Shown here piece after piece: positions 21,401 to 60,568 of a stretch of 64,000 nucleotides of DNA. A program made the position numbers and the translations under genes. Position 1 is the first letter of the stretch, and each line of letters begins with the position of its first letter. The stretch is taken from positions 185,132,001 through 185,196,000 of the forward strand of contig NC_091470.1 in NCBI RefSeq assembly GCF_036971445.1, given 5' to 3'. The notes beneath the pieces were generated by a model that ran no database searches, was not told the origin of the DNA, and saw only the letters and a program-made list of their open reading frames with translations. Origin of the DNA: Narcine bancroftii. Its lineage: Eukaryota.

Positions 21401-24400
21401 ATGTCCCTCCTTTTTACCATGGTAGCAAACTAATGCTCCTGTTTCCCAATTCCTACTGGGATTGCCACGAGGTCCCGGGAACGGTCGTCATCCCCGGAAT
21501 TCCCCTCTACCCTTGCCCCTGCTCTGGTCTCTACTCTCCCACTCCCGGAGTTCCTCCCAATGTCCAGGAGCTGGCACACAGCCCCTACCCTTTCCTTGCT
21601 GTCCCTCCACGACTTCTTTTACTGCCTGCATCAAAATCTTAGCCTTTCCTTTCTGTCTATTGGGCATTCACTCTTAAAATTACGCACCTCTGTACTAGTC
21701 AGAGGCACATTTACGAAACCGAGACCCCCTCCCATGGGAACTTCCCATAAAGATCTCATCCAGTTAATTTCTGGCTTATCCTCTCCTTTATAATGTCTAG
21801 ATTCTTGCTCTCTGAGAAATGAATCAAAGGGTTCTGCCCTTCCCTCCCAGAGGGTCTCACACTGTTTTGAATCAAAGTCTCCTCCCTCTCTTGTCAATTG
21901 AGGTGGTAATCTAGTACTTTGTGAACGGGTCATCATACCACCCCTACTTTCTTCTCCTTTCTTTAGCTGTGGGGGAGGAGGGAAAGGTGAAGAAGGGTAG
22001 AGCATAGGAAAGAGGGGAAAGATAAGAGCTGGCATAGGAGGAGCATAAAGTGGAGGAAGGGAATGTAACACATCCCATCCTTGTGTTTCAGGGACAAAAG
22101 GTTCCTCATCCTTCTTGTCCTTACATTCCTTTTCATTCAAAACCAGTTGATCAACCGATCCACTGAGCCAGCAGGCTAGGCTGCATATTCTCTGCTCTCA
22201 ATATTATCTCTGATTTTGATAGAGCCAGATGTTCAATGCCTGACACATCCAGTCCTCATCAGATCCGAACTTTGGCCAATATACCGAATTCCCTTTTATT
22301 GGGTTTTTAACCCATTCCAGACAGCAATACCTGACCATGGTCTGTTTGTCTTTCCCGCGGGTTCCTCCCGCACCCCAATCAGATAGCATTAATCCTAACG
22401 GACTTTGCTTCGTTATTTGATCGTCCCATCCTTCCTTAGGACTATCTCCCATGCTACTCACACCTCCCATACTAACAAGTAAGTAAAATTCCTCTTACCA
22501 GGATCCAGTAGCTATTCCTAGTGCACTTCCTTAACGTCCTCCCGTTGTTTGTTCTCAATGCCTCTTCTCGGCTATCACTCACTTCATCCACTGATCAGTC
22601 ACCCATCGTCCATGAGTCCAGCTGAATCAGCTGGGGTGCACCTACCCTCGTCGTCGGGCACTCTGTCAGTGGAGGGAGTGGGATCCCGGACGAGCCCCCA
22701 TTTGTGAGAAACAGAAGTACCTTCACAGAATTTGCTCGAGACAAAAATTGAGATCAAAGCACATTTATTATACAACAATGCAAAGTTAGGTGCTTCCCCT
22801 TACCCTGGGAATACACACACATACTGGGGCTCACCCAACTTTTATACAGTTCATTTCAGTGTAGAGGTACCCTCCCCCCCACTAACATTCTTCTGCCTCC
22901 TGGATAAGTTTGGCATGGAGGAGTCACGTGATGGAGTAGTGGCCGGACGGTGAACTCCAGCCCTCTCCAGAAAAGTCGGGAAAAACAAGAGAAAATACAA
23001 AGGCACAGAAATAAAAGTTAAAGAAAAGTGAGTATAAAGGTGGAAAGAAGATGGCGACAAAAAAAGAAAAATCAAAATCAACGGTAAGAAGAGAGGAAGA
23101 GAAGACAACGGAGGAAGAAAGAGAAGGCTTTACCTGTCCGAAGAGGCCCGATGTGGAGAGAGAAGCCCGCTTCCTCAGGTCGGTAGAAATAGGACTACAA
23201 AAATGGCTCGCAGAGCCGAGTAAAAGTGCGCAACCGTGCATGCGCGAGGAGTCGCGCATGGGCGATGCGCATGAAAAAAAACACACTGACGGGAGGGGGG
23301 AGTCGATCTCCACAGCCGGCAACGACAGCTGCAGAACACCTGCAGCAAGAAGAGACCACAGAAGACAATGGAAACAAGAAAGAAGAGAAGAAAAGGGCAA
23401 CAAAGAAACAACAGATGGCCAACCCAGAGGAAGAAGAGGAAGAGTACAGTGAAATAGAAGAAGAAAAGAAAGGCAAGGTAAAGGATATACTTTCTCTTGT
23501 TAGAGGATACATGGAGTCATTTAAAGAATGGCAAACCAGGAATTTAATGATTTAAGAAGAAGAATAAACAACACAGAAGAGAAAGTGAATAAAATAGATA
23601 TGACCTTAACAGAAATGGGAAAGAAAATGGACAAGATGGAAGAGCGGGCAGTAGCAGCAGAAATGGAGGTAGAAGACTTAAAAAAGAAATTGGAGAAATC
23701 TAATAAAAAAACTAAAGAGACACAAGAACTACTAGCTCAAAAAATAGATACAATGGAAAATTTTAACAGAAGAAATAACATAAGATAGTGGGCCTTAAGG
23801 AAGATGAAGAAGGCAAGAATATGAGGGAGTTTATAAAAGAGTGGATCCCTAAGACCCTAGGATGTCCAGAACTACAGCAAGAAATGGAAATAGAAAGGGC
23901 ACATAGAGCATTGGCCTCTAAACCACAACCACAACAAAAACCAAGATCTATTTTAGTAAAATTCCTAAGATATACTACAAGAGAAAAGGTACTGGAGAAG
24001 ACAATGGAAAAAGTAAGAGAGGGCAACAAACCACTGAAGTATAAAGGGCAAAGAATCTTCATTTATCCAGATATAAGTTTTGAACTCCTAAAGAAGAGAA
24101 AAGAGTTCAATACAGCAAAGGCGATTTTATGGAAGAAAGGGTATAAATTTATACTAAAGCATCCAGCGGTATTGAAAATATTTATTCCAGGACAACAAAA
24201 CAGACTATTCTCGGATCCAGAAGAAGCACGAAAATTTGCAGAACAATTACAAAAATAGACTGAGGGATGAAGACGGGTAATGAGAGTAAAAATGATCACG
24301 ATTGATATGTATGTGGGTAAAGACAAAAATAGACTGAGGGATGAAGACGGGTAATGAGAGTAAAAATGATCACGATTGATATGTATGCGGGTAAAGACAA

Positions 24401-27400: not shown

Positions 27401-30400
27401 ATACTATACTTATTTCAGGCATTGCCAATACAACTGACAGAAAAATTCTTCAAAGAGTTAAAGAAAATAATAAGGAAATTTTTATGGAGAGGGGGGAAAC
27501 CGAGGATAGCACTAGATAAATTAACAGAATGGTATAAACAAGGAGGCTTACAATTGCCAAACTTCAAAAATTATTATAGAGCCGCACAATTAAGATACCT
27601 ATCAGATTTTTATCAAACAAGGGAAAAACCAGACTGGACGAGATTAGAATTAGATAAAATAGGGGAAAAGATACCTGAACACATATTATATAAATGGGAC
27701 GAAAAATTGGTACAACATAGAACTTCTCCAGTATTACATCATCTCCTCAATATTTGGAAAAAGATTAATGTAGAAAGGAATAAAACAAATTACCAATTAC
27801 CAAAACTAATATTGACGCAAAATAAGCTACTCCCTTTTACAATAGACAACCTTTCCTTTAGAAAATGGGAAAAAAAAGGGATTAAAAGAATAGAAAATTG
27901 TTTTTCAGGAAGTAGATTCTCATCCTTTGAACAAATGAGAGATAAGTACAATATAACTGGAGATACAGCGCTGGAATATTACCAACTGAGATCCTACTTG
28001 AAAGATAAATTAGGAAGCAATTTGAGTTTACCAGAGGGAAGTAACTTTGAATATGTGATTACAGATACAATGTTAATCAAAAGATTTATATTAAACTGTA
28101 TATTAAACTGCAAGAAAAGGAGAATGAGGAAACAAATGGTAAAACTAAACAAAAATGGGAACAAGATTTAAATATAAAGATAAAAAAGGAAACATGGGAG
28201 AAATTATGTTCTGGAACGATGAGAAATACAATAAATACGAGGCTACGTATGATACAATATAATTGGTTACACAGACTATACATTACACCGCAAAAGTTAA
28301 ATAAATGGGACCCAACAGTATCTGATAGATGTTTTCAATGTAAAAAAGAAATGGGAACAACAATTCATGCAATCTGGACATGTGAGAGAGTAGAAAAATT
28401 TTGGGATGATCTCAGTCAGATATTAAATAAAATAACAGAAAACAATATACCAAAGAATCCAGAGATCTTCCTCCTAAGTAACATAAAAAAACAAAGAATT
28501 TGGAATTGATTTGGATGGTGCACAAAAAAGATTTGTTAAGATAGCTCTAGCCGTAGCAAAAAAATGTATTATGTCAACCTGGAAATTGGAAGATAATTTG
28601 AAAATACAACAATGGTATATAGAAATGAATAAATGTATTCCATTAGAAAAAATAACATATAGTTTAAGAAATAATATTGAAATATTCGAACAAGTATGGG
28701 AGCCTTACATTAAATACAATAGCGAAAACCTACCGGGGACAAACATTACCTAAGTTGATAGAAGGAGAAGGAAAGAAAAGAATGGACTCAGTAGAATTTC
28801 TGGTGTATTTTTGTTGAATGACAACATTGACTGACTGGCTTAATGCAACCTAGATTGTATACCTAAAATGGATGAGAGGGGGGGGGGTGGCTTGGGAGGA
28901 GGGAGGGGGAGAAAAAGTCACTGTATATGTGTGAAAAAGAAAAAGTGTATATCATGGCTAATGTGATTTATGGTGTGAAAAATAAAAAATTTAAAAAAAA
29001 AGATAAGTTTGGCATTAAGCAATCCTGTCTGCCTACCTGCTGTTTCTGTGAACTTGGAGGACCAGGGGGTATCCTGTCTGTGTCCCATCATGTCATTGTC
29101 TCCTTATTGTCCTTATTCACAAACCTTCCTTTGTCCTTATTCACACCTTCTCAACTCTCAGGGTAACTCTTATATGGAACTTGCTAATTCTGTCTAAGGC
29201 TTACTACTAATTACATATGCAGGACTTGCAGACTCTCTCTAAGGCTAGAAGACCCTCATCTTATTCAGACTAACTTTACTTCCTACAATTCTATTATCTA
29301 CCCTTGTCCTATTTATACTGCATTTATTCATTACACATATATCCATACTAGCTTTCTTCATCTCTCATATTTTCATATTAGTTTTACTCATCTCTCACAC
29401 CTCTGTCCCTCAACCCTCCTCACCTTTGTATCCAGAGGTCCCTCCGACCCTTGACACATCCCACTGCTCATAGTGCATGTCCCACCCTCATGCCACAACT
29501 TCCCTCTGTCCCTTGACCCTCCTCACCCTCGTACCCCAAGGTCTCTCTCCCCATTAGCAGTGTATATCCCATCCCCTGATGTCGCTCCATCCCTCTACCC
29601 TAATGCTCTAATGCTCCATTCCCTCCATCCCTCAACCCACCCCACCCTCATACCCCAAGGTCCCTCCGTTCCNNNNNNNNNNNNNNNNNNNNNNNNNNNN
29701 NNNNNNNNNNNNNNNNNNNNNNNNNNNNNNNNNNNNNNNNNNNNNNNNNNNNNNNNNNNNNNNNNNNNNNNNNNNNNNNNNNNNNNNNNNNNNNNNNNNN
29801 NNNGATCTTGATGGGAATTGTGCAGGTCACCGGGGGAATTCCGCTCATCGTTTCAGCCCCCAACTCCACCGCAGTGACAACTGGAACACCCTGGTGGACA
29901 GGATCACTGGTGGGTAGGGGAGGGAATGGGGGGAAATGAGGTTAGGAGGGAGGGGAATGAGAGGAGGGAGGGGAATGAGAGGAGGGAAGTGGTGGGAAGA
30001 GGAGATGGGATGGGACTAGAAGGGTGGGAAAATGCAGAGGACAGTTGGGTTTAGAACAGCAACCCCCCTCTCCATCTAACACCTCTCTCTCTCTCTCTCC
30101 CTTCTCCTTTTTTGTCTATCTCCCTCCCTGTCCCCCATATCTCTCACACTCTCTCTCCCTCATATCTTTATCTACCCCTCTTTTGCCCTCTCCTCCCTAC
30201 CCCCTCCACCTCTTCCCTCTCCCTGGTGCCTCCCTCTCTTCCTTACCGACCCCTGTCAACTCTCTCTCCCCCTTTCTTCCACTTCTCTCTCTCTGCAGTC
30301 TGTGGTCTCCGGGTGCTTCACCATGAATGCAGAAGGAAGGCCATCCGAAGACTTTGTGAGTTGTCTCCCCTGTCCCCTACACCCCTCCCTGTCTCTGTTA

Positions 30401-44083: not shown

Positions 44084-46581
44084 GGTCTCCAGATGTCTGA
44101 GAGCTGTCTGTAGCCATCTGCTCCGTGTCGCACCCCCCCCCCCCCTTCCTCCCCCCCTTCTCTGGCTCCCTTCCCTTCTGCCTTCCTTGTCCCTGTAACA
44201 CCCTCCATGTCTCTGTGACACTCTCCGGACCCCTACACCCCTCTCTTTCTCTGTAACCCTCTCTGGTCCTCTCCTCCAATCCCCAACACCCCTCCTTGTC
44301 TGTGTAACCCTACCCTCACTATTTCTGTAACCCCCTCCAGTCCCCTATGCCCTCCCTATCTCTTTAACCCCCTCCGGACCCTACACTCCTCTCTGTTTCT
44401 GTATTCCTGTATGGTCACCTGCACCCTTCTTTGTCTCTAACCCCTTTCTGGCCCCATACATCATTCTCTTTCTCAGTAACTTGCCTACACCCCTCCCCAT
44501 TTCTAACCCTCACTGGTCCCCTACCCTCCCTGTTTCTGTAATCCCCACCTCCAGTCCCCTACACCCTCCCCTCCAGATTTCCATAAAGTTTTGTAATTAT
44601 TCTCAATAAATTTATCAGTACTCAGCTGTCAGGTCTGAACTTAATCCATCACTGGACTCTAATGGCACACTCCAGTCAGCCAATCTCCCTCCCTCCCTCC
44701 CTCCCTTCTTACCACCCCTTCCTCTCCACACCCTTCCTCCTCACTCTCCTTCCTTCCCTCCCTCCCCCACTGCCACCTCCCCCCTTGCCTCCCCCCCTCC
44801 TTGCCAGCCCTCCCCCTCACAGACCCTCCCAATCGCCCCTCCCCCCTCACCGTTTCCCCCCCCCCCACCGCCGTCTCTCCACGCAGCATGTAGAACAGAG
44901 AGGTACAAAGTCCAACACATGAATAGTGGGGAGTGTCGCTGAACAGAGAAACATTGGTGTTCAGGGACCACACAGTGAACGGTGGGAAGTCTTGTAGAAA
45001 AGAGAGAGATCAGGGTACAGAGACTGACACGATGAATGGAGGAGAGGGTTGTAGGTCAGAGTGACCTCCAGGCACAGGGGCTGATATGGTAAACATTGGA
45101 GAGTGTCAAAGAATGGAAGACCTCGGGGGTACAAGGGTGGGATGCATCTCCCTGGCAGTGCCAACAGCAGACAAGACAGCTCCTCCAGACTCCTGATGGA
45201 GATGGTAAAGGACACACAGCGGTGTGACCCCTCCAGACACCCTCAAGGTGAAGCACAGCTACAGCCCACCTGGTGGAGATCGGACGGACAGCTCGAGTTA
45301 GTACCTCCATGTAATTATCCAGTCTTTCCTTAAATGTAAATAACGTCTTTGCTTCAACCACCTCTGCTGGAAGCTTATTCCACATCCCAACCACCCTTTG
45401 CGTGAAGAAATTTCCCCTCAGGTTCCCCTTATAATTTTACCCCTGCAATCTCAAACCATGGCCTCTGGTTTGAATATCCCCCACTCTTAATTGAAAAAGC
45501 CTATCTACGTTGACTCTCTCTGTCCCTTTTAAAATCTTGAACACCTCCATCAAATCCCCCCTCAATCTTCTGCGCTCCAGAGAAAAAAGCCTCAGGCTGC
45601 TCAACCTTTCTCTGTAACTCAAACCTTGACATCCTGTCAACATTCTCGTGAACCTTCTCTGCACTCTCTCTATTTTGTTTATATCCTTCCTATAATTCGG
45701 TGACCAAAACTGCACACAGTATTCCAAACTTGGCCTCACCAATGCTTTGTACAATTTCATCATAACATCCCTACTCTTGAATTCAATACTCCGATTTATG
45801 AAGGCCAACATTCCAAATGCCTTCTTCACCACTCTATCTACCTGAGTATCAACTTTGAGGGTACTATTTGCCATAACTCCTAAATCCCTTTGTTGCTCTG
45901 CACTTCTCAATTGTCTACCATTCAATGTATATGATCTATTTAGATTTGCCTTTCCAAAATGCAACTCTTCACACTTATCCGTATTAAATTCCATCAACCA
46001 TTTTTCAGCCCACTCCTTGAGCTTTCCTATATCTCTTTTTAAGCTACGGTAATCTTTCTCACTGTCCACAATACCACCAATCTTTGTATCATCTGCAAAC
46101 TTACTTATCCAATTTACCACCCCTTCTTCCAGATCATTAATATATATAACAAACAATAGTGGACCCAGGACCGATCCCTGAAGAACTCCACTAGTCACCG
46201 GCCTCCAATTTGACAAACAATTTTCTACCAGTACTCTCTGACACCTCCCAACCAACCATTTCTGAATCCATTTCACTACCTCCTTATTTATACCTAATGC
46301 CTCCACCTTTTTTCCTAACCTCCTGTGGAGAACTTTGTCAAAAGCTTTACTAAAGTCTAAATAGACAACATCTACACCCTTCCCTTCATCAATCTTTTTT
46401 GTAACCCCCTCAAAAAAGGTTTGTTAAGCATGATCTACCCCTGACAAAACCATGCTGACTACTTCCTATCAATCCCTGTTCTTCCAAATATTTGTAAATA
46501 CCATCCCTCAGAACACTTTCCATCATCTTATCCACCACAGACGTCAGACTCACAGGTCTATAATTTCCTGGCTTACATTTG

Positions 46582-49500
46582 TTTTTTTTTAAAACTTTAT
46601 TTAAAGATTTTATAACATGAATAACATATAGGATTACATTTTAAAAAAATTAAGAATAAAATAATAAAATTACAATACAGTATCAATAATCTAAATAAAC
46701 TATACCCTCCCCAATAATTATTACACATTAATAACCCAACTCAAATTGGTCCAACCCCCCCTTTCCCCCCCCAAATAAAGAGTGAAGAATTAATAAAGTT
46801 AATAATATGTGAGAAAAAAAACCCACTTACAAAAAAAAAACAAAAACATAACCGATTAAAATACTAACAAAAAGAAAAGTAATTAATACTAAGATATCAG
46901 ACTTAAAAAACATTTAAATCAAACTTAAATGCATATATTTAACAAACGGAGTTAAGATGAAACATATATTTAACTCAAACTTAATATATAAAAAATTAGT
47001 AAAGTTAGTAACATTATCTATCAAAAATTCTTAAACAATAATCAATTCTTAAAAAAAAATTGTAGCATGAAAAAAAAGAAAAAAAAACTTTCTCTATAGA
47101 GATAAACCTTCACCAAATATCAACTAACTTCACATCTATCATCATATTAGTCACATAAACCACCATCTTAAAACAAAATTCAAACCTCATTAAGCATTGT
47201 ACAATTCAATTTTAGTACTCTTCCACCATTTTTCCCTTTTATTCTTGAATAGTTATCCAATAAAAGCTCCAATACCACGTTTAAATATCCCCAATCATTA
47301 CATTAAAATTCAGATATCCAAATAATAAAAACACATCAACAACGAAATCTATATCTTCAACAAATGGAGCATAAACCACAAACAAAATTCAAGCCTCATT
47401 AAGAATTGTACAATTCGAGAGGAGTCACGTGATGGAGTAGTGGCCAGACGGTGAACTCCAGCCCTCTCCAGAAAAGTCGGGAAAAACAAAGGAAAACACA
47501 AAGGCACAGAAATAAAAGTTACAGAAAAGTGAGTATAAAGGTGGAAAGAAGATGGCGACAAAAAAAGAAAAATCGAAAGCAACGGTAAGAAGAGAGGAAG
47601 AGAAGACAAAGGAGGAAAAAGGTGAAGGCCTTACCTGTCCGAAGAGGCCCGCTGCGGAGAGAGAAACCCGCTCCCTCAGGTCGGTAAATAATGGACTACA
47701 AAAATGGCTCGCTGAGCCGAGTAAAAGTGCGCAACCGTGCATGCGCGAGGAATCGCGCATGCGCGATGCGAATGAAAAAAAACACACTGACGGGAGGGGG
47801 GACCAGCTGGGGAGTCGATCTCCACAGCCGGCAACGACAGCTGCAGAACACCTGCAGCAAGAAGAGACCACAGAAGACAATAGAAACAAGAAAGAAGAGA
47901 AGGAAAGGGCAACAAAGAAACAACAGATGGCCAACCCAGAGGAAGAAGAGGAAGAGTACAGTGAAATAGAAGAAGAAAAGAAAGGCAAGATAAAGGATAT
48001 ACTTTCTCTTATTAAAGAATACATGGAGTCATTTAAAGAATGGCAAACACAGGAATTTAAGGATTTAAGAAAAAGAATAAACAACACAGAAGAGAAAATG
48101 AATAAAATAGAGATGACCTTAACAGAAATGGGAAAGAAAATGGACAAGATGGAAGAGCGGGCAGTAGCAGCAGAAATGGAGGTAGAAGACTTAAAAAAGA
48201 AATTGGAGGAATCTAATAAAAAAACTAAAGAGACACAAGAACTACTAGCTCAAAAAATAGATACAATGGAAAATTTTAACAGAAGAAATAACATAAGATA
48301 GTGGGCCTTAAGGAAGATGAAGAAGGTAAGAATATGAGGGAGTTTATAAAAGAGTGGATCCCTAAGACCCTAGGATGTCCAGAACTACAGCAAGAAATGG
48401 AAATAGAAAGGGCACATAGAGCATTGGCCTCTAAACCACAACCACAACAAAAACCAAGATCTATTTTAGTAAAATTCCTAAGATATACTACAAGAGAAAA
48501 GGTACTGGAGAAGACAATGGAAAAAGTAAGAGAGGGCAACAAACCACTGGAGTATAAAGGGCAAAGAATCTTCATTTATCCAGATATAAGTTTTGAACTC
48601 CTAAAGAAGAGAAAAGAGTTCAATACAGCAAAGGCGATTTTATGGAAGAAAGGGTATAAATTTATACTAAAGCATCCAGCGGTATTGAAAATATTTATTC
48701 CAGGCCAACAAAACAGACTATTCTCGGATCCAGAAGAAGCACGAAAATTTGCAGAACAATTACAAAAATAGACTGAGGGATGAAGACGGGTAATGAGAGT
48801 AAAAATGATCACGATTGATATGTATGTGGGTAAAGACAAAAATAGACTGAGGGATGAAGACGGGTAATGAGAGTAAAAATGATCACGATTGATATGTATG
48901 CGGGTAAAGAGGTATAAGAGTGAATAGAGACAATGTGCATACGTGAATGTATCTGTACTTAGAGGAAAATATAGATAGTATAGACAAGAATTAATAAGGG
49001 AAGGTAATGGAATAGAGAGAATAAGGAGGGAATTAAAAGAGTGACCTTTGTGACATATGAAAAGTGAAATCTTTTCTGGGGGGGGGCGGGGTGAGGGGAA
49101 ATAGCGGTCACTGCAAAATCAGTTGACGCTTGCGAGTGGATTCGCAAATCCAAATGGAGAGGGGAGATGTGGTTGTCCGACAAGGGATAAAGGACAACTC
49201 AGGAGGGGAAGGGGAGATTGGGGATAAATAAGATAGAAATAGGTGAATAAGGAAAATGTTGGATGTTGTAGGAATGTTGTCTTATAAAGAGTTGAAAATA
49301 AGAAAACAGAAATGGAAAAGGAGGAAAGGTAATGATGGAAAAACGGAAAGAGAAGATAAACAAAATATAAAAGGGCTACGCTGAACTACATGACTTTAAA
49401 TATTAATGGAATACATAACCAAATTAAAAGGAAGAAACTACTAAATTTAAATGAATAAATGTATTCCATTAGAAAAAATAACATATAGGTTAAGAAATAA

Positions 49501-51898
49501 TATTGAAATATTCGAACAAGTATAGGAGCCTTACATTAAATACAATAGCGAAAACCTACCGGGGACAAACATTACCTAAGTTGATGGAAGGAGAAGGAAA
49601 GAAAAGAATGGACTCAGTAGAATTTCTGGTGTATTTTTGTTGAATGACAACATTGTCTGACTGGCTTAATGCAACCTAGATTGTATACCTAAAATGGATG
49701 AGGGGGGGGGTGGTGGGGGGGTGGCTTGGGAGGAGGGGGGGGGGGAGAAAAAGTCACTGTATATGTGTGAAAAAGAAATAGTGTATATCATGGCTAATGT
49801 GATTTATGGTGTGAAAAAAAAATTAAAAAAAAAAAGAATTGTACAATTCAATTTATAACTTTCACCATTATTCCCTTCGTTCTATAACTAAAATAGCAAA
49901 ATAATATACACCAGAATTACCACTCCTTCACCTTAAAGTTAAAGAAAAAATTTAAAAAAAAACATCCATCCCATTCACATTTAAATTTCAGATATTCCTT
50001 ATCTACTGAATAAACTTTACAAAATAAACCACATCAATTTTTAGTTTTTTAAACAATCAAATACTTTCTTATGTTTTTTTTTAATATTTAAACAAAAACA
50101 AACCCCTTCACTCTTTAATCTAATAATACAAAAAGGAAAAAAAAACAGGTAGGTGGTTAAAAATACCCCCTCCCGTCTAAACCGCGCAATGCGGTAACTC
50201 CCAAAAAAAATGTGTGTGAGATAACTCACACGTTAGCAGATGATTTTCAGGAAATAGTGCCTATCCAGTTCTCTCCCCCAACTCTCACTTCATCTTAAAC
50301 TAACATCATCATTATTTAATATCCCTTTTTTTAAAAAAAAAACATTAAAAAAAAAGGATAACTTCTTTTAATCAGCTCCAACTGCCAAGTCACCATTACA
50401 ACCATTCCTTCTTGGAGCACGGCTCTTTTCTTTCATCTCTTGTCTCCTTAGAGATCACGGCAGACTATGTCTCTGTTGAAACTGAGTAATTGGCAGCTCT
50501 TGAGCAAATGCTATAGCTTCCTTTGGAGAATCAAAGAACTTTGGTTGGCAACCATCTTGGAAAACCTTCAAAACAGCTGGATATCTAAAGGTTGCCTTGT
50601 AACCTTTCTTCCACAACAACTCTTTAGCAGGATTGAATTCCTGTCATTGGAACATAACTTCTTGACTCAAATCCACATAGAAGAAAACTCGATTATTTTG
50701 AATCATCAAGGGTGATTTTCTCTGATGTGCATTTCTAATAGCCACTCGTAAAATTATTTCTCTGTCGTAATAATTCAAGCAACGAACCAAAACAGGTCTT
50801 GGACTTTGACCTGAAATAGGTCTTCTACGCAAGGCTCTGTGAGCACGTTCCAGTATTATACCTTCTGGGAAATGTTCTTGACCCAGCACCTGCGGAATCC
50901 ATTCAGTAAAAAATTTTCTTGGGTCTGGTCCCTCCATACCTTCCAGCAAACCAATAGTCTTTATATTGTTCTGTCTGGATTGGTTTTCCAAATAATCAAT
51001 CTTTTTCACCAAATTTTTATTTTGAGTTTGAAAGTCTTCGACCATTTTGGTCACATCAAAAACTTGATCCCCTATTTCGTCTATATCTTCTTCACACTAA
51101 TTAAATTTATCTCTCACTTCAAGCTTAAAGCTCCAAACTCAGCCATCTGTTGAGAATATATTTTCACCAGAGTATTAAACCTAGTACCAAGTTCAGTCAT
51201 AATCTTGGATAATCCCTGCATTATATAAGATAATTTAGATTCAAGATTCACAAAAATCTTTTCAATTGGAAGAGATTTTGGCTCAACATATTCCTGCTTC
51301 TTCTGCATAACCAAAGGATCTTCTGTTCCTTCCTTCATTCTGGTTGCCTTCCTTGTAGTATGACTGCTTGTGGAAACCCCAGCCACAGCCTCTCCAGCAA
51401 TGACTGGAGGATGCTGGCCGGGGTTTTCCCCAGTCCATAATGTATTAAGTTCTCCCAGTACATCAAGTTGTATAGGTTTTTCTATCTCAAGATATGCAGT
51501 TTGCATCGCCACCTCTACAGTTGACAAATGCCTTTGAGTAACTCTTTGTTCTAAAGCCTGTTTGGCGCCCTCTTTAGGGGGCTCTACCGATGTAACATAG
51601 AGCTCTACATCCGAACACTGTACCTCTCTCCTGGGATCCATTTCACGCTGAGTCCCGGTGTCTTTCCTGTAGGTAGGCTCCAAAACTTGAACTTTTGGAA
51701 AATGTAGTTTTTTGATGATCTGTTGTTTTTTTTTTGCTCTTTTCCACCAATTGTACCATCATAAGTTAAATTAACCGCACTGAAATTATCTAAACTTTTT
51801 AAGAATTTTAACGGGCATTTCTAGACAAAACAATAAGATAGAGTCAGGAGAGGACTGGAAGGCACGTCTGATCCTTACACCATCTTGCCACGCCCCCC
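46582..51898 (-). mobile_element. ORF1-only (HAL1-like) non-autonomous L1 derivative, copy 1 (contains nested deleted L1)
   Basis: 16-bp TSD TCCTGGCTTACATTTG (46566-46581, 51899-51914); 5' GGGGGCGTGGCAAGATGG; ORF1 LENQSRQNNIK..LERAHR..PRPVLVR..YVDLS; decayed ORF2 endonuclease remnant; poly-A at 46582-46590. Confidence 0.9.
47417..49833 (+). mobile_element. Internally deleted L1 (ORF1 + spacer + both ORF2 ends + 3' UTR)
   Basis: 16-bp TSD AAGAATTGTACAATTC (47401-47416, 49834-49849); near-identical to the L1 at 22917, but ORF2 is fused at ctactaaattta|aatgaataaatg (~49450) and its ATG is changed to AGG. Confidence 0.93.
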
Positions 51899-53646
51899 TC
51901 CTGGCTTACATTTGGACCCTTAAACAGCGGAACAACATGAGCCACCCTCGAATCCTCTGGCACTACTCCCGTGATCAGTGACATCCTAAATACCTCTGTT
52001 AATGGCCCCACTATCTGTACACTAGTCTCCCTGAGTGTCCTTGGGAATACATTGTCTGGACCCGGAGATTTGTCCACCTTTACCTTTTTTAACACTGCCA
52101 TCACTACCTCCTCAGTTATCCTTATATGATTCATGACCTCCCCACTATTTTTCTTTACTTCAACTGGTACAATATTTTTTTCCCTAGTGAATACCGAGGA
52201 AAATAAATCATTTAAAATTTCCCCCATCTCCTCTGACTTTTCACATAGCCTACCCTCCCTATCTACAATGGGTCCAATTTTTAATCCCTCACTAATCTTT
52301 TACTTTTAATGTACCTATAGAAACCCTTTGGATTTATTCTTACTCTGCCTGCCAAAGCCTCTTCGTCCCTCTTTTTGGCCTTTCTAATTTCTTTCTTAAG
52401 ATTTTTACTACACTCCTTGTAGTCCTCTTTCAATTTCTCATTACCCTGCTCTTTATACCTCTTGTACACCTCCTTCTTTCTCCTAACCAAATTTCTAATA
52501 TTTGTCGAAAACCAAGGCTCCCTGTGACTTCCAGCCTTTCCTTTGATCCTCACTGGGACATATCTACTCTGTACTCTCAAAATTTCTTCTTTGGATATTC
52601 TTCATTTTTCATTTACATTCTTTCCTGAAAAAATCATGTCCCACTCAATACTCCCCAAATCCATTCTCATTCCTTCGAAATTTGCTTTTCTCCAATCCAG
52701 AACCTCAACTTTAGGCCCTTCTTTGCTCTTCCCTAAAACTACCCTAAAACTAATAGAATTGTGATCACTAGACCCAATTTGTTCTCCAACATTAACCTCA
52801 GACACCTGACCTATCTCGTTCCCAAACAAGAGATCCAGTATTACACCGTCCCGAGTCGGTTCCTCTACATATTGATTAAGAAAACTATTTTGCACACATT
52901 TGACAAACTCTAGTCCATCCAGCCCTATTACTGTATGGGTATCTCAATCAATGTGAGGGAAGTTAAAATCTCCCATGATCACTACCTTATGTTTATTACA
53001 CATATATGCTATCTCCTTACAAATTTGTTATTCCAGTTTTCTTGGCCCATTTGGTGGTCTATAATACACTCCTATTAGTACCCTCATGCTTCCTCCACCC
53101 CTCAATTCCACCCAAACAGCCTCACTGGATGATCCCTCCAAACCATCCTGCCACCTCACGTCAGTAATGTCCTCCTTAACAAGCAGAGCAACTCCTCCCC
53201 CTTTTTTACCCCTGTTCTATCACATCTAAAACATTTGTATTCTGGAATATTTAGTTGCCAGTCCTGACCCTCCTGTAACCAGGTCTCACTAATTGCCACA
53301 ACATAATTCCAAGTGCCAATCCATGCTCTAAGCTCATCTAACTTGTTCACTATGCTTCTTGCATTAAAGTACATGCATTTCAGAGAATGACCCTCACATA
53401 TATTCTCTATTCTACCTTTTACCTTAACCTCCATCCTTCCTTTGTTATCTTTATCATTCTTAACTAGGTGACCATGTACCCTAGACACTGCTTGCAAACT
53501 CTGCTCCCCACCCCCCTGCCAAACTAGTTTAAACCCTCCCCCACAGCTCTAGCAAATCTGCTTGCCAGGATATTGGTCCCTTTCCAGTTCAAGTGGAGTC
53601 CGTCCCCTTTGTACAGGTTCGACTTTCCCCAGAAGAGATCCCAATG

Positions 53647-55666: not shown

Positions 55667-57739
55667 GAATAGCGCGTGGCACTGGCAAGAGTCCAGAGAT
55701 TACTACCTTAGAGGTCCTGTTTTTTAACTTCCTGCCTAATTCTATGTCTTCCTGTTTCAAGTCCTCATCCCCACTTCTAACTAAATCATTGGTCCCCACA
55801 TGGACCATGACTTCTGGCTACTCACCTTCCCCTTGCGGAATTCTGTGAACTCGATCAGAGATATCCCTGACCCTAGCACCAGGGAGACAACAGACCAACC
55901 TGGATCCCCGATCTCATCCAGCAAACCTCCTATCTGTCCCTCTGACAAGTGAGTCCCCAACCACAATTACCCTGTTCTTATCCCTCCTTTCCTTCTGAGC
56001 CTCAGGGGCAGCCCCTGTGCCAGAGACCTGACCCCCACGATTCCTCCCTGGTAGGCTATTTTCACCCAGCAGTATCCAATGCCGAATTCCTGCTGCTGAG
56101 CGGCACTTCCACAGGGGTACTCTGCATTGGCGCTCTCCCTCCTTTCCTCACAGTCACCCAATTCCCTGACTCCTGCCTTCTAGGGGTGTCTGTCTCCCTG
56201 TAACTCCTCTCTATCACTGCCTCTGCTTCCCTTATGATCCTCAGTTCATCCAACTGCAGCTCAAGCTCCTTAACATGGTCACTCATTATATGCAATTGGA
56301 TGCACCTTTTGCAGGTGTAGTCATCAGGAACAGCTGTGCAGTCTCTGATTTCCCACATCCCACAATTGGAGCATATGACTACCCCAGCTGACTCCATTTA
56401 CCTCTTTTCTCAATGTATATAGGTTATTTAAAAAGAAAAACTGAACAAATAATACTAAAAGACTAACCAAAAAGGACACCTTACCACACAGGGAGCTCCT
56501 TCTTATCGAAGTCCCTCGAGCCAAAGTCCCAAGTCTCCACTCCTTCACTGCCCCACTCCTCACTGGCCGCTCCTTCCCCTTTCACTCCTTTTATAGGCCC
56601 CTTGACCAATTAACCCTGTCACTTTCACCAAGCTCCTCCTCCTCCTCCGACTCCCAGCCGAACCAAGTAGCCGAACTCCATCCGTTCCGTTGTAAGACTC
56701 ACAAAAGCGATGGCCGACCAGTTGAGCTGTACACGGCTCTGTGGGACTGGCTGGGCCCAGACCTGCTGGAAATAGACAATGCTGTTCTCCTGGCAGGAAG
56801 CATGTCAGACTCCATGAGGAAAGGCGTCATCACCCTCATCTTCAAACAGAAGGGGGAGGAGGAGGAAATCAGGAATCGGAGATCCATTTCATTTCTAAAT
56901 GGAGATTACAAAATCCTGTCTAAGGCTATCACCAATAGAGTCGAGTCTGTCCTGCGGCTGGTGATCCATCATGACCAGATCTGCATGGTTCCAGGCAGGA
57001 AGATCTCTGACAGCCTCACGCTGGTCAGGGGTACCATCGCCTATGTGCAGGACAGTGGGAATGGACGACTGCCTGATCAGCTTAGACCAGGAGTTTGACT
57101 GGATGTTGCACACGTACATGATGGATGCACTCTCCAAAATGGACTTTGGGGAGGGAATCTGGAATTGGATTAAACTGTTCTATACAGTTGCCTGTAGTGC
57201 AGTCCAACTCAATGGGTGGGAAACAGATAGCTTCCCCATCGTCTGGAGTTGGGCAAGGCTGCCCACTGTCTCCAGTCTTATTTATGTACTGCATAGATCC
57301 GTTTGCTGAATCCATCAGGAAGGGATGAGGACTTAAGGAGTGACATTGCCAGGGAGTGGAGGCAATCAGGTCAAGGCTTTCCTGTATATGGACGTTGTTG
57401 TATCTCAGATCGGACGCACAATCGGTCTGGAGACTGACCAGCATATGTGGGCATTTTGAGTCCACATTAAGCACCAGGGTAAACCAGGGGGGCGTGGCAA
57501 GATGGCATAGGGAACAGACGTGCCTTCCAGACCTCTCCTGACTCTGATTTATTGTTTTGTCTTTAAGTGCCGGTTAAAGTTCTTTTAAAAGTTTATAAAT
57601 AATAAGAGGTGTTGGATTAGTGCCTAATGGTTTATATGCAAAAAAAGGTAAAAGAAAATATCAACAGACTGTTAAAAAACTACATTTTCCGAAATTGTCT
57701 GAGCCTACTTGTTTACAGGAAGCCAGGTCTTAACGTAGA

Positions 57740-58903
57740 ATGGATCCAGAGGAGGACGTGCAGAGTTTGGCATTGAAGCTTCGTTTTAAGCCGGTGAGGC
57801 TCTCTGAAGGTCGCACCCAACAGCTTTCAGAACAAGGGGCTGGACGGGTGCCAGTATTTCACACAACGACCACTGTGAGTGCTGTTACTGAGGTTTTGAC
57901 AGTTGAATCAGCTGGGGCGCCACCAGCTGGAGAGTTAAAGAGTTGTCATTCGACTGCTATAGTGGTGGCCCTGCAAAATGCATCTTCAATTACAACGGTT
58001 TTTCCAGACATCGATTCAGTGAAGATGATTAAAGAGATTTGGCTTAAAGATAACCCTGATCCTCAGTCTCCTGGCATTGCTGGGGGGACTTTGAGAGGGA
58101 TTTTTATACGAAGTCAAACTGCTAGAAAAGATACTAAATTAAGGGAAGGGACAGAAGATCCCGTGGTCTCTAAGGAACAGCAAGACCCCATTATGCCTGA
58201 ATCTACTTCTGTTGAAATGTCTGTTAAGGATCTTGAAGATAAGATATATTCTGTATCGAGTCACTTAGCTAATTTTGTGAACCTGTTTATTTCCAAGATT
58301 AATGCGATGGCGGAAGTCATTAATGGAGCTTTTAAGCTTGAAACCATTGAAAGATTTGAAATGTGTGATCAAGGTTTAATTGATGTACAGGATCAACTGC
58401 AAGATGAAAATAGAATAATTGAAACATTGCAGATCCAAAATAAAAAATTAGCAAAAAAGGTTGATTATTTGGAGAATCAATCTAGACGGAACAACGTGAA
58501 AATTGTTGGTTTGCCAGAAGGCATAGAAGGACCAGATCCAAGAAAATTTTTTACTGAATGGATTCCACGAGTGTTAGGAGAGGATAGATTCCCTGAAGGT
58601 TTAATACTGGAACGTGCTTATAGAGTTTTAAGAAGAAAATCTTTTTCAGGACAGAATCCAAGATCTGTTTTGATCCGTTGTTTAAACTATTGTGACAGAG
58701 AGACAATTTTACGTACGGCTATTAGAAATGCCCAGCAAAATCGATCTCCTTTGATGGTTCAGAATAATCCTGTTTTCTTCTATCAAGATTTGAGTCAAGA
58801 AATTATGTTTCAACGACGCGAATTTAATTCTGTGAAAGAACGGTTGTGGAAAAAAAGACATAAGGGAACATTCAGGTATTCTGTAGTACTGAAGATTTTT
58901 TAG
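57740..58903 (+). CDS. L1 ORF1p-like protein (coiled coil-RRM-CTD), C-terminally truncated by a nonsense change
   Basis: LENQSRRNNVKIVGLPEGIEG, LERAYR, PRSVLIR, FFYQDLS. Confidence 0.75.
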   Translation: MDPEEDVQSLALKLRFKPVRLSEGRTQQLSEQGAGRVPVFHTTTTVSAVTEVLTVESAGAPPAGELKSCHSTAIVVALQNASSITTVFPDIDSVKMIKEIWLKDNPDPQSPGIAGGTLRGIFIRSQTARKDTKLREGTEDPVVSKEQQDPIMPESTSVEMSVKDLEDKIYSVSSHLANFVNLFISKINAMAEVINGAFKLETIERFEMCDQGLIDVQDQLQDENRIIETLQIQNKKLAKKVDYLENQSRRNNVKIVGLPEGIEGPDPRKFFTEWIPRVLGEDRFPEGLILERAYRVLRRKSFSGQNPRSVLIRCLNYCDRETILRTAIRNAQQNRSPLMVQNNPVFFYQDLSQEIMFQRREFNSVKERLWKKRHKGTFRYSVVLKIF

Positions 58904-59489
58904 GATGGAAATTAACCAAAGTTCTTTGACAATCTTAAAGAGGTTATGGACTTTGCTCAGTCTCTACCAATCATGCAGTTTCAGGAACGATGTAGTCCTT
59001 CAAGGTCTCCAAAGAGAGTAGAGATGTAAGGTGGGATCCAGTCTTTTAAAAGAAATGGAAGCAATGGTGACCGAAGTGGTAACGTTGATTTAAAAAAATA
59101 AATTTTTTATCTTTTTTTTTGAGAAGAGTTTAAATAGTTTAAATAATGATGATAGTTTAATGAAATGGGAGTTGGGAGAGGGAACTGGGTGGGCACTAGT
59201 TTCCAGAAGTCATCAGCTACCTGTGAGTTATCTCACACCCAATATTTTGGGGGAGTTACCGCTTTGGGCGGTTTAAACAGGAGGAGGTAGTTGTGACCTC
59301 CGACCTGTTTTTTTTTTCTTTTTAATTTTTGGGTTAAGAAGTGAAGGTTTTTTTATTATTTTTTTTTAAATAAATAATTTTTTTTAAACTCTTTTTGTTT
59401 TCTGACTGTAATTGAGAGGGAATTAGGAGGTTTTTTTCTCTCCTTTTTTCTCCTTTTTTTGGGGGGAGGTTCTCTTTTTTCTTTTTTAA

Positions 59490-59702
59490 GAGGATAATGT
59501 CACAGAAGATAATAAGTCAAAAATTGAGGATGTTGAATTAGATGAAGAGGAAGATGAGGGGAAAGGTGATAAGAAGAAAAAAAAGAAAATTAAGTACAAA
59601 TACATTGAGGGAGAAGAGTTTAATAAAATTAAGTTAATTTCGATAGAGAATTTTGAAGATGTTATAAATGAAGAATATGGAGAATTTTATAAGAGTTTGA
59701 AC
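59490..59702 (+). pseudogene. HSP90AA1: Captured HSP90-alpha coding fragment (charged linker / start of middle domain), C-to-T hypermutated
   Basis: [64 protein letters not shown] aligns without gaps to HSP90-alpha [64 protein letters not shown] (recalled human sequence). Confidence 0.9.
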
Positions 59703-60568
59703 TTTTTTCTTTTTTTTTCTTTTTTATATAAGGGGAGGGGAAGGGAATAAAAAGTTTATCTGATTGTTTTTCTAAGGGATGTTTTTGTTCTCGATGAATT
59801 ATAAAGGAAACTTGGTATTAATGGAAATTCTGTATTTATGTATTATTAATTATGATTTTTTTGAATAACAGATATGTGGTTGATATATGATTTTAATATT
59901 TGAACTTAGTTTTAAAGTGGATTTCATTTGTTAAATACATGTATTATGTTTGATTTAAATATATGTTTAAGGGTATTATTTTAGTATTGATATTTTTTTT
60001 TGTTGTTAGTAATTTTTGTTGTTGTTAAGTTTTATCCTTTTTTTGTAAGTGGGGTTTTTTTTAATTTTATTTACAATATTGTTAATTAATTCTTCACTCT
60101 TTATTTTGGGGGGAGCATTGGACTAATTTTAAATTAGATGATTAATGTTGTGTTATAATTATTGGGGGGGTTAATTTGTGTAGTTTAATGAGGTAGTATT
60201 CTAATTTTTATTATCTTATTTTTTATTTCTTTAAATGTAATTTTTATTTTATTCATGTTATAAAATTTTAAATAAAGTTTTAAAAAAAAGCACCAGGGTA
60301 AACCAGAAGAAGAGTGAGGTAATGCTCTTCGTTAACTGACCCAATCGGTCCACTATCCCCTTCACAGTCAGATCTGATTACCTGAAGGAGTTGGGGATCT
60401 GGTTTGGAGGGGCTGAGGAGAGCAACAAGAATTGGTTGGAGCAGAACTCAAGGTCCACCAAAAATTGGGTCTGTGGGTGCAGTGTTCCCTCTTGATAATG
60501 GGGAAGAACTTGGTCATCGGGTGCAAGGAGCCCTCGGTGCTGCTGTAAGCCAGAGCAGTTTTCCGGTT

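What the first reader, a model, noticed from the sequence alone, without database searches (positions are those of the whole stretch)
57488..60287. ORF1-only L1 family with strand-specific C-to-T hypermutation (possible deaminase-driven restriction)
Seen: downstream of ORF1 (about 59100-60287) the sense strand is almost devoid of C while G is retained. The independent minus-strand copy (46582-47416, 49850-50400) shows the mirror image. ORF1 differences from copy 1 in conserved motifs fit C>T: ERAHRAL>ERAYRVL, PRPV>PRSV, YPAVLKVFQDG>YSVVLKIF*DG. The ORF2 C-terminal remnant reads EL*RKLGI..YY*L* where the L1 in this window has YYQLR. Most of these sites are not CpG. Established: CpG decay is strand-symmetric, and APOBEC3 editing of retroelement cDNA gives G>A on the sense strand, the opposite polarity. 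Inference: repeated C-to-U editing of the element RNA, or deamination of the non-template or second strand by an AID/APOBEC-type enzyme, accumulating over retrotransposition cycles. The autonomous L1 in this window is A-rich and does not show it.
Basis: partly seen in the sequence, partly recalled or inferred. Interest (0 to 1): 0.85.

Follow-up and report, generated by a model that had tools for sequence, protein, structure and literature searches.

The report
ORF1-only L1 parasite, sense-strand C-to-T drift
A half-LINE-1 retrotransposon of an electric ray (it keeps only the first L1 gene) has lost nearly all cytosines to thymines on its RNA-sense strand wherever the sequence is unconstrained, and a captured piece of the host HSP90 gene shows this came from mutation; the changes are inherited by the whole family and are not a scar on this copy.

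Summary
Copy 57488-60289 has target-site duplications (TSDs), a poly(A) end and only ORF1. Its 1.2-kb tail has C 6%, G 20%, T 44%, against 26-28% C in the flanks. The minus-strand copy (51898-46582) mirrors this.

The direction of change is proven by a captured HSP90 fragment (59490-59702). At codon positions 1-2 of invariant residues, 9 of 12 C became T, all outside CpG, against 1 of 20 G to A (p=7e-5).

- ORF1 differences between the two copies are symmetric (C>T 47, T>C 37, G>A 62, A>G 66).
- No ORF2 remnant is detectable in the tail.
- Changes private to young copies are symmetric (C>T 7, G>A 6).

The signal is therefore pressure on the replicating lineage, not hypermutation of individual copies:
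- ORF1 four-fold sites share the bias (C .10, T .42).
- ORF1 is under purifying selection (dN/dS 0.19).
- A conserved, strongly folding island (59161-59310) keeps its C.

The polarity is opposite to canonical APOBEC3 editing. It points to deamination of the sense RNA or of the non-template DNA strand.

The scan had already noted the HSP90 fragment and the island on this same window.

The parts
57471..57487 (+). Left target-site duplication of copy 1 (17 nt; may extend by the two preceding A)
   Evidence: Identical 17-mer at 60290-60306
57488..57739 (+). 5' UTR of copy 1. It starts with a G-run and the GCGTGGCAAGATGG motif, as copy 2 does, so the copy is full length
   Evidence: Aligns to copy 2 at 51897-51611 with 72% identity; C/(C+T) 0.34
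57740..58903 (+). ORF1 (387 aa plus TAG stop), an L1 ORF1p homologue truncated relative to 444-aa relatives
   Evidence: The family profile hits human LINE-1 ORF1p structures 2LDY, 2YKP and 2YKO at E 5e-6. It is 40-44% identical to the ORF upstream of the L1 ORF2 at 23782-24249. P0001 and P0002 are 93-95% identical to it. dN/dS against copy 2 is 0.19. Four-fold sites are A .26, C .096, G .22, T .42
58904..59030 (+). Former C-terminal coding part of ORF1, cut off by two Q-to-stop changes (TAG at 58901-58903 and TAA at 58913-58915)
   Evidence: It still reads like the C-terminus of P0003 (FQDGYQPKFF...AQSLPI); C/(C+T) is still 0.35
59101..60281 (+). Non-coding 3' tail with saturating sense-strand C depletion
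   Evidence: C .063, G .196, T .444. By segment, C/(C+T) is 0.03-0.13 outside the island
59161..59310 (+). Conserved, structured island that keeps its cytosines
   Evidence: 24 of 29 C are shared with copy 2, against 7 of 35 elsewhere in the shared tail. The RNA fold is -59.5 kcal/mol, z -3.84, reached by 0 of 200 shuffles. Its C have predicted pairing probability .96, against .74 for random placement among pyrimidines
59490..59702 (+). Captured HSP90 coding fragment (charged linker to [10 protein letters not shown]) in sense orientation; it serves as a polarised recorder of mutation
   Evidence: Pfam PF00183 at E 2.7e-8. Human HSP90 alpha and beta at E 2.6e-14 and 8.8e-14. C is .033. C>T at 9 of 12 sites against G>A at 1 of 20. 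The same piece, with 1 difference, occurs in a run of another coded organism (record 15)
60271..60289 (+). AATAAA signal (60271-60276) and poly(A) (60282-60289)
   Evidence: Read directly; copy 2 ends the same way
60290..60306 (+). Right target-site duplication of copy 1
49834..51898 (-). Copy 2, 5' part: 5' UTR, broken ORF1 of the ERAHRAL/PRPV type, island (50312-50163) and the start of the tail. TSD at 51914-51899
46582..47416 (-). Copy 2, 3' part of the tail with poly(A). TSD at 46581-46566. Sense strand has C .063, T .477

Best explanation
This is a HAL1-like, ORF1-only, non-autonomous LINE-1 derivative of an electric ray; its ORF1 matches only Narcine bancroftii proteins. It is transcribed by Pol II, polyadenylated, and inserted by L1-type target-primed reverse transcription, presumably with ORF2p supplied in trans. 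Its replicating lineage has been under a persistent substitution pressure that turns C into T on the RNA-sense strand only. C survives at ORF1 replacement sites and in a conserved hairpin-rich island. The changes were fixed in master copies before the present subfamilies amplified. The copy in this window carries them by descent and is not itself a hypermutated or restricted copy. Most likely mechanism (inferred): low-level C-to-U deamination of the single-stranded sense RNA intermediate, or otherwise of the non-template DNA strand of transcribed source copies. Reverse transcription copies the change into DNA, and it compounds over very many cycles. Whether an AID/APOBEC-like enzyme does this is open. 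Shown here: the anatomy, the composition, the polarity, the non-CpG nature, the family-level inheritance and the selection on ORF1. Inferred: the substrate (RNA or DNA) and the agent. The confidence given covers the whole statement; the shown parts alone would rate about 0.85 and the RNA-substrate step alone about 0.35.
For: Anatomy: TSDs, AATAAA and poly(A), ORF1 only. ORF1 is homologous to L1 ORF1p. The family has thousands of contigs in DNA runs, and near-identical pieces occur in other coded organisms. Polarity: in the HSP90 passenger, C>T at 9 of 12 sites against G>A at 1 of 20, p=7e-5, all non-CpG, with A and T almost untouched. Only the pyrimidine ratio is shifted: C/(C+T) is .03-.13 in the tail and .19 at ORF1 four-fold sites against .51 in the flanks, while G/(G+A) is about .4-.46 against .48-.51. 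Lineage-level and persistent: both subfamilies (dS about 1.1, dN/dS 0.19) have C-poor shared and private tail segments. Outside the island only 7 of 35 C positions are shared, against 47 of 97 G positions. Differences between copies and changes private to young copies are symmetric. Single-strand target: surviving C are predicted to be base-paired more often than randomly placed C (island .96 vs .74; tail .82 vs .70; 0 of 100 and 0 of 60 simulations reach the observed value). Not a property of the region, nor of the ERV or the window's L1: flanks and ERV-like ORFs are symmetric, and the L1 has no shift in pyrimidine ratio.
Against: There is no direct evidence for RNA editing. Contigs of runs guessed to be RNA show the same classes of difference as DNA contigs, and contigs cannot show low-level editing. 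The base-pairing test is not significant for the older copy 2 (z 1.1), and in the island it cannot be separated from selection for structure. No TC, CC or WRC context stands out; only a weak shortage of C after G (1 of 57) and at CpG. Per the literature read, cartilaginous fishes are reported to have APOBEC2, while APOBEC1 and NAD1 are listed only from other vertebrate groups (PMC5889660). An unrelated RT-bearing LINE shows a milder bias of the same sign (four-fold C .10, T .23, G .32, A .34), so the pressure may not be specific to this family. The HSP90 ancestral state was inferred from protein conservation, not from the ray's own gene. Only two genomic copies could be read base by base.
Confidence: 0.5

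Rival explanations
1. An AID/APOBEC-type deaminase restricts this family by hypermutating element RNA or second-strand DNA at each retrotransposition, so individual copies carry heavy private C>T loads.
For: The polarity and the near-saturation of C>T in the HSP90 piece. Two Q-to-stop changes truncate ORF1. AID is present in cartilaginous fishes (PMC5931798).
Against: This copy shows no private excess: C>T 6 against G>A 4 among the 31 best-supported within-element differences. Three young ORF1s give C>T 7 and G>A 6. The stops and the ERAYRVL and PRSV motifs are shared by P0001 and P0002. The HSP90 piece in its converted state is shared across copies and runs. No deaminase context signature is seen. 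ORF1 stayed under purifying selection.
Confidence: 0.12
2. One or a few ancient hypermutation bursts hit a master copy's 3' region. The result was then simply inherited, and there is no ongoing pressure.
For: Differences between copies and among young copies are nearly symmetric. The tail is more depleted than ORF1 four-fold sites (C/(C+T) .08-.13 against .19).
Against: At least two separate episodes are needed: one in the ancestral tail shared by both subfamilies, and one in the HSP90 piece seen only in copy 1's subfamily. The private tail segments of copy 2 are also C-poor. ORF1 synonymous sites of both subfamilies are biased as well. Outside the island, C positions turn over faster than G positions.
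Confidence: 0.18
3. Selection on base composition. A T-rich, C-poor transcript is favoured, for example for expression or for evasion of silencing, as has been argued for LINE composition in general.
For: [quoted passage not shown] L1, the RT-bearing LINE and this family each have their own composition in one genome.
Against: A passenger HSP90 fragment with no plausible function was driven to the same state. Nearly every C was replaced, while G, A and T were almost untouched. Site-by-site selection of that strength on neutral passenger sequence is unlikely.
Confidence: 0.1
4. A biased error spectrum of the reverse transcriptase or of second-strand synthesis, such as G:T mispairing when the sense DNA strand is made, with no deamination involved.
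For: It would give sense-strand C>T and needs no deaminase. Many cycles at ordinary RT error rates could in principle add up (inference).
Against: The window's autonomous L1 relies on an L1-type RT and shows no shift in pyrimidine ratio; its partnership with this family is not shown. G:T mispairing in first-strand synthesis would also give G>A, which is not seen (1 of 20). Preferential survival of predicted paired C is not expected from polymerase error.
Confidence: 0.1

Closest known systems
HAL1 (half-L1) elements of mammals: ORF1-only L1 derivatives mobilised in trans
   Same: It keeps an L1 ORF1p-type ORF, lacks ORF2, has poly(A) and TSDs, and is multi-copy.
   Different: The host is a cartilaginous fish. 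The 3' tail is unrelated to the window's L1. It carries a captured host HSP90 fragment and an extreme sense-strand C>T bias. The abundant young subfamily has a truncated ORF1.
APOBEC3-type DNA editing of retroelements (G>A clusters on the sense strand; PMC4866542, PMC3880073)
   Same: Strand-specific transition hypermutation of a retroelement, compatible with cytidine deamination of a single-stranded intermediate.
   Different: The polarity is opposite: C>T on the sense strand, which those screens use as the negative control (PMC4866542). There is no TC or CC context. The changes are inherited by the family rather than clustered in individual copies.
C-to-U editing or deamination of plus-strand RNA (APOBEC1 targets; directional C>U in coronavirus genomes, PMC7831814)
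   Same: Directional C>U on the sense RNA strand, accumulating over replication cycles, with an apparent preference for unpaired C.
   Different: Here the record is in germline DNA of a LINE derivative. No RNA-DNA differences were shown. APOBEC1 is not reported from cartilaginous fishes (PMC5889660).
Clade-specific, strand-biased base composition of non-LTR retrotransposons (A-rich L1; CT-rich Xenopus L2; PMC7140322, PMC9099904)
   Same: A LINE-type family with a stable, unusual, strand-asymmetric composition that differs from co-resident LINEs.
   Different: Those papers leave mutation versus selection open and lean towards selection. Here a passenger with a known ancestral state shows directly that mutation produced the bias.

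Membership tests
HAL1-like ORF1-only L1 derivative | Encodes a homologue of L1 ORF1p | tested here: met
   The profile of 8 family ORF1s matches human LINE-1 ORF1p chains 2LDY, 2YKP and 2YKO at E 4.7e-6 over the RRM and CTD. It is 40-44% identical to the ORF just upstream of an EN+RT ORF2 in the window. Pfam itself gives no hit above threshold. The AlphaFold model was too poor to use (pLDDT 45), though it shows a 100-residue helix before the C-terminal domain.
HAL1-like ORF1-only L1 derivative | No ORF2 (endonuclease or reverse transcriptase) | tested here: met
   ORF1 is the only ORF of 150 aa or more in 57488-60289. tblastx of the tail finds only copy 2, plus one marginal 18-codon hit (E 0.046) at 2641-2694. 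The C=T-collapsed alignment to the L1 3' region is not significant.
HAL1-like ORF1-only L1 derivative | L1-type insertion hallmarks: TSD and 3' poly(A) after AATAAA | tested here: met
   17-nt and 16-nt TSDs in the two copies, with poly(A) and AATAAA in both.
HAL1-like ORF1-only L1 derivative | Amplified as a family; mobilised in trans by an autonomous L1 | tested here: inconclusive
   Amplification is shown by thousands of contigs and by ORF1 relatives 93-95% identical. Trans-mobilisation and the partner L1 cannot be tested with these tools.
Canonical APOBEC3-type editing of first-strand cDNA | G>A excess on the element's sense strand | tested here: not met
   G>A at 1 of 20 sites against C>T at 9 of 12 in the HSP90 passenger. 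G/(G+A) is close to the flank value.
Canonical APOBEC3-type editing of first-strand cDNA | Clusters private to single copies, with TC or CC context | tested here: not met
   Private changes are symmetric. The share of pyrimidines still C is .105 after T.091 after C and .106 after A.
AID-type deamination (WRC hot spots) | Preferential loss of C in WRC and retention in SYC | tested here: inconclusive
   C after G is rare (1 of 57) but C after A is not (13 of 123). Saturation hides the context, and the C retained in the HSP90 piece include both GTC and TAC.
C-to-U RNA editing of the element transcript | C>U polarity on the sense RNA | tested here: met
C-to-U RNA editing of the element transcript | RNA-DNA differences in one individual; an RNA-active deaminase in the genome | not testable with these tools
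   Only Logan contigs were on hand and the RNA label was a guess.
CpG methylation decay | Confined to CpG and strand-symmetric | tested here: not met
   All 9 scored C>T changes are non-CpG. The flanks have CpG o/e .33-.39 but symmetric composition.
RIP-like repeat-induced point mutation | C>T on either strand of duplicated DNA, with CpA preference | tested here: not met
   The same (sense) polarity is seen in both subfamilies, at ORF1 four-fold sites and in the passenger. C before A is not depleted (.104 against .105 before T).

The most novel reading that the evidence does not exclude
A cartilaginous-fish cytidine deaminase (AID or an undescribed AID/APOBEC-like enzyme) edits C to U in the sense RNA, or in the non-template DNA strand, of particular LINE-derived transcripts in the germline. 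This would give retroelement editing of a polarity opposite to APOBEC3. Over many cycles it would set the base composition of whole families, and so provide a mutational answer to why LINE clades differ in composition.
Probability: 0.25. Interest if true: 0.8.

Novelty: new variant of a known kind. Interest (0 to 1): 0.6.

Why it matters
Screens for retroelement editing treat sense-strand C>T as the negative control (PMC4866542). Reviews of transposable-element base composition leave mutation versus selection unresolved and lean towards selection (PMC9099904). In this family a passenger of known ancestry, an invariant HSP90 block, was driven to the element's own odd composition by one class of change on one strand. 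That is direct evidence for a mutation-driven, strand-specific bias of non-canonical polarity in a LINE derivative, in a vertebrate group where APOBEC1 and APOBEC3 have not been reported. It makes the question testable, because thousands of copies can be polarised on a tree and the HSP90 insert gives an absolute reference. It also documents a HAL1-like element with host-exon capture in a ray.

Tried and rejected
No further genomic copies, and not the ray's own HSP90 gene, could be fetched. All base-level comparison therefore rests on two copies plus the read laying tables.
- A metagenome scan for the island motif gave 0 hits.
- Rfam gave nothing near a gathering score in 57400-60400.
- Pfam does not recognise ORF1. 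A profile search against PDB sequences did.
- The AlphaFold model of P0003 had pLDDT 45, so no fold search was run.
- The C=T-collapsed BLAST of the tail against the window produced only low-complexity noise. A scored local alignment with shuffles replaced it and was negative.
- The base-pairing protection test on copy 2's tail was not significant (z 1.1).
- The read-laying output listed only 40 of 421 differing places, and only those at a share of 10% or more. It cannot show rare per-copy edits.
- A search of earlier findings by words returned nothing.
- Rejected readings: CpG decay, RIP-like mutation, canonical APOBEC3 polarity, an artefact of regional composition (the flanks are symmetric), and a bisulfite-like artefact (the element has TSDs, is shared by many runs, and its surviving C are not CpG-specific).

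Full report
WHAT IS THERE

Window 57488-60289 (+) is one discrete retrotransposon insertion. A 17-nt target-site duplication (TSD) brackets it at 57471-57487 and 60290-60306. It ends in AATAAA, about 5 nt of spacer, and A8. Its only long ORF is 57740-58903, 387 aa.

A second, older copy lies on the minus strand at 51898-46582, with a 16-nt TSD at 51914-51899 and 46581-66. It is split by an internally deleted L1 at 47417-49833 (+) that has its own 16-nt TSD. Copy 2 itself sits inside an RT-bearing LINE. The two copies are 66-79% identical where they can be aligned.

ORF1 finds relatives only in Narcine bancroftii: P0001 and P0002 at 93-95% identity, and P0003 at 66% with 444 aa. Earlier notes on this genome (IgW, germline-joined Ig genes) fit a cartilaginous fish.

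Laying public contigs on the element shows thousands of pieces in the DNA runs of organism A. Near-identical pieces occur in two other coded organisms.

WHAT KIND OF ELEMENT

Pfam does not recognise ORF1. A profile of eight family members does match the RRM and CTD of human LINE-1 ORF1p (2LDY, 2YKP, 2YKO) at E 5e-6. The C-terminal half is 40-44% identical to the ORF directly upstream of an endonuclease plus RT ORF2 in this window. The structure model was poor (pLDDT 45) but shows a 100-residue helix before the C-terminal domain.

Nothing in the 1.2-kb tail resembles ORF2 or the window's L1 3' end. This holds even when C and T are treated as one letter. The element is therefore an ORF1-only, HAL1-like L1 derivative.

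dN/dS between the two subfamilies' ORF1 is 0.19, with dS about 1.1. ORF1 therefore mattered for propagation, and the subfamilies are old.

The abundant young subfamily has ORF1 cut short by two Q-to-stop changes that P0001 shares.

THE OBSERVATION

The tail at 59100-60287 has A .30, C .063, G .196, T .444, against C .26-.28 in both flanks. Splitting purines from pyrimidines is more telling than GC skew:

| Region | C/(C+T) | G/(G+A) |
|---|---|---|
| Tail outside one island | .03-.13 | .28-.46 |
| Flanks | .51-.52 | .48-.51 |

On its sense strand, copy 2 shows the same pattern.

ORF1 four-fold sites carry the bias too: C .096, T .417, G .224, A .263. The pressure therefore acts on the whole element and is masked by selection at replacement sites.

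CONTROLS

- Flanks are symmetric.
- ERV-like ORFs at 19729-22140 (-) are symmetric at four-fold sites.
- The autonomous L1 is A-rich, with low C and low T alike (four-fold C .04-.085, T .11-.165) and no shift in pyrimidine ratio overall.
- The unrelated RT-bearing LINE shows a milder bias of the same sign.

POLARITY

At 59490-59702 the tail carries a sense-oriented fragment of HSP90, running from the charged linker to [10 protein letters not shown]. Pfam scores it at E 2.7e-8, and human HSP90 alpha and beta at E 2.6e-14 and 8.8e-14.

In the blocks that are identical in human alpha and beta, the ancestral bases at codon positions 1-2 are fixed by the amino acid.

- Of 12 such C: 9 are now T (P>S, S>L, T>I three times, P>L, P>F), 1 is kept, 1 is G and 1 is A.
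- Of 20 such G: 17 are kept and only 1 is A (Fisher p=7e-5).
- A and T are almost untouched.
- None of the 9 converted C is followed by G.
- Only 3 of 60 third positions are C.

This proves directional, non-CpG, sense-strand C>T. It rules out the idea that the tail was simply born C-poor. The same insert, with one difference, is in contigs of another run (record 15). The conversion therefore predates the burst of amplification.

INHERITED, NOT PRIVATE

- Between the two copies, ORF1 differs by C>T 47, T>C 37, G>A 62 and A>G 66.
- Among the 31 best-supported within-element differences from the other copies, most of them near-universal, C>T 6 stands against G>A 4. Over all listed places the classes are near-symmetric: T>C 53, C>T 35, A>G 37, G>A 35.
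- Private amino-acid changes in three young ORF1s imply C>T 7 and G>A 6.

This copy is therefore not hypermutated relative to its family, and there is no sign of restriction.

The process did persist, however. Shared tail segments were already C-poor in the common ancestor. Segments private to each subfamily are C-poor too, including the HSP90 piece. Outside the island only 7 of 35 C positions are shared between the copies, against 47 of 97 G positions.

THE ISLAND

Segment 59161-59310 keeps C at .18. Of its C positions, 24 of 29 are shared with copy 2, which makes C the most conserved base there. It folds at -59.5 kcal/mol, z -3.84, reached by 0 of 200 shuffles, into several hairpins.

With two sequences only one compensatory pair is seen, so covariation is not established.

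Surviving C are predicted to be paired more often than the same number of C placed at random among the pyrimidines. The values are .96 against .74 in the island and .82 against .70 in the rest of copy 1's tail, and no simulation reached the observed value. In the decayed copy 2 the effect is not significant (z 1.1).

This fits a process that attacks unpaired C in a folded sense strand. In the island it cannot be told apart from selection for structure.

MECHANISM

The deaminated or misread C lies in the sense strand. That means the RNA intermediate, the non-template strand of a transcribed source copy, or the second DNA strand. Canonical APOBEC3 editing of first-strand cDNA gives the opposite sign, and screens use C>T as their negative control (PMC4866542).

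I favour slow C-to-U change of the RNA, compounded over many cycles and filtered by selection on ORF1 and the island. The non-template strand is the next candidate. The reasons:
- The bias is element-wide.
- It is persistent.
- It spares predicted paired C.
- It is absent from the window's L1, which relies on the same kind of RT (the partnership itself is an inference).

An enzyme is plausible but not shown. No context signature is visible beyond CpG and a weak GC effect. Contig-level RNA and DNA sets do not differ. The literature read here lists APOBEC2 for chondrichthyans and lists APOBEC1 and NAD1 only from other vertebrate groups (PMC5889660); AID is invoked for shark T-cell receptor hypermutation (PMC5931798).

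Rivals are episodic bursts, selection on composition, and polymerase bias. They are weighed in the rival entries.

VERDICT

Two supporting claims fail: the ORF1 motifs and the ORF2 remnant. The 'restriction' reading is not supported. The element is a new HAL1-like member. The sense-strand C>T signature is a new variant beside known retroelement editing, and it bears on the open question of why LINE clades differ in base composition (PMC9099904, PMC7140322).

Noticed in passing
window 47417-49833 (+): An internally deleted L1 (5' region, ORF1 with a frameshift, then the L1 3' end and poly(A)) is inserted into copy 2, with a 16-nt TSD GAATTGTACAATTCTT. Its ORF1 segment 48295-48762 matches 23782-24249 of the full L1 with the same scores.
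   Followed up: partly
window 45437-46581 and 51915-53500 (-): The host LINE of copy 2 has an RVT_1 ORF at 45437-46306. Its sense strand has C .10, G .30, T .25-.27. This is a milder pyrimidine-only bias of the same sign as the ORF1-only family, so the pressure may reach other LINE clades.
   Followed up: partly
window 4009-6652 (+), continuing to about 8900: A 2.6-kb pure-purine minisatellite (14-nt unit GGGGGGAGGAGGAA, 184 copies, 93% matches) is followed by 36-nt and G/A-rich arrays. These arrays produce the 1000-aa and longer 'ORFs' in the mechanical list.
   Followed up: partly
P0004, P0008 (Narcine bancroftii annotation): Two annotated host proteins (a GalNAc-transferase 6-like isoform and a GPR139-like receptor) carry stretches 50-94% identical to this ORF1. 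They are probably gene-model chimeras or exonised copies.
   Followed up: no
window 58901-58903 and 58913-58915: The abundant young subfamily's ORF1 is truncated by two Q-to-stop changes relative to 444-aa relatives, yet it amplified massively. Either the last ~57 residues are dispensable or ORF1p is supplied in trans.
   Followed up: partly
window 59470-59492: The HSP90 piece is preceded by a pyrimidine tract ending in AAG. This looks like a 3' splice acceptor, so the capture may have come from pre-mRNA or genomic DNA rather than mature mRNA. The 3' end of the piece shows no donor-like GT.
   Followed up: no
window 59311-60279: Among pyrimidines of the tail, C after G is almost absent (1 of 57, against about 10% after A, C or T). 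The sample is small and the effect is weaker in copy 2.
   Followed up: partly
window 19729-22140 (-): ERV-like ORFs, including an MLV-type integrase C-terminal domain at 20425-21093. Base composition at four-fold sites is symmetric.
   Followed up: partly
window 29674-29803: A run of N (assembly gap or masked stretch) lies just downstream of the autonomous L1. It was left untouched.
   Followed up: no
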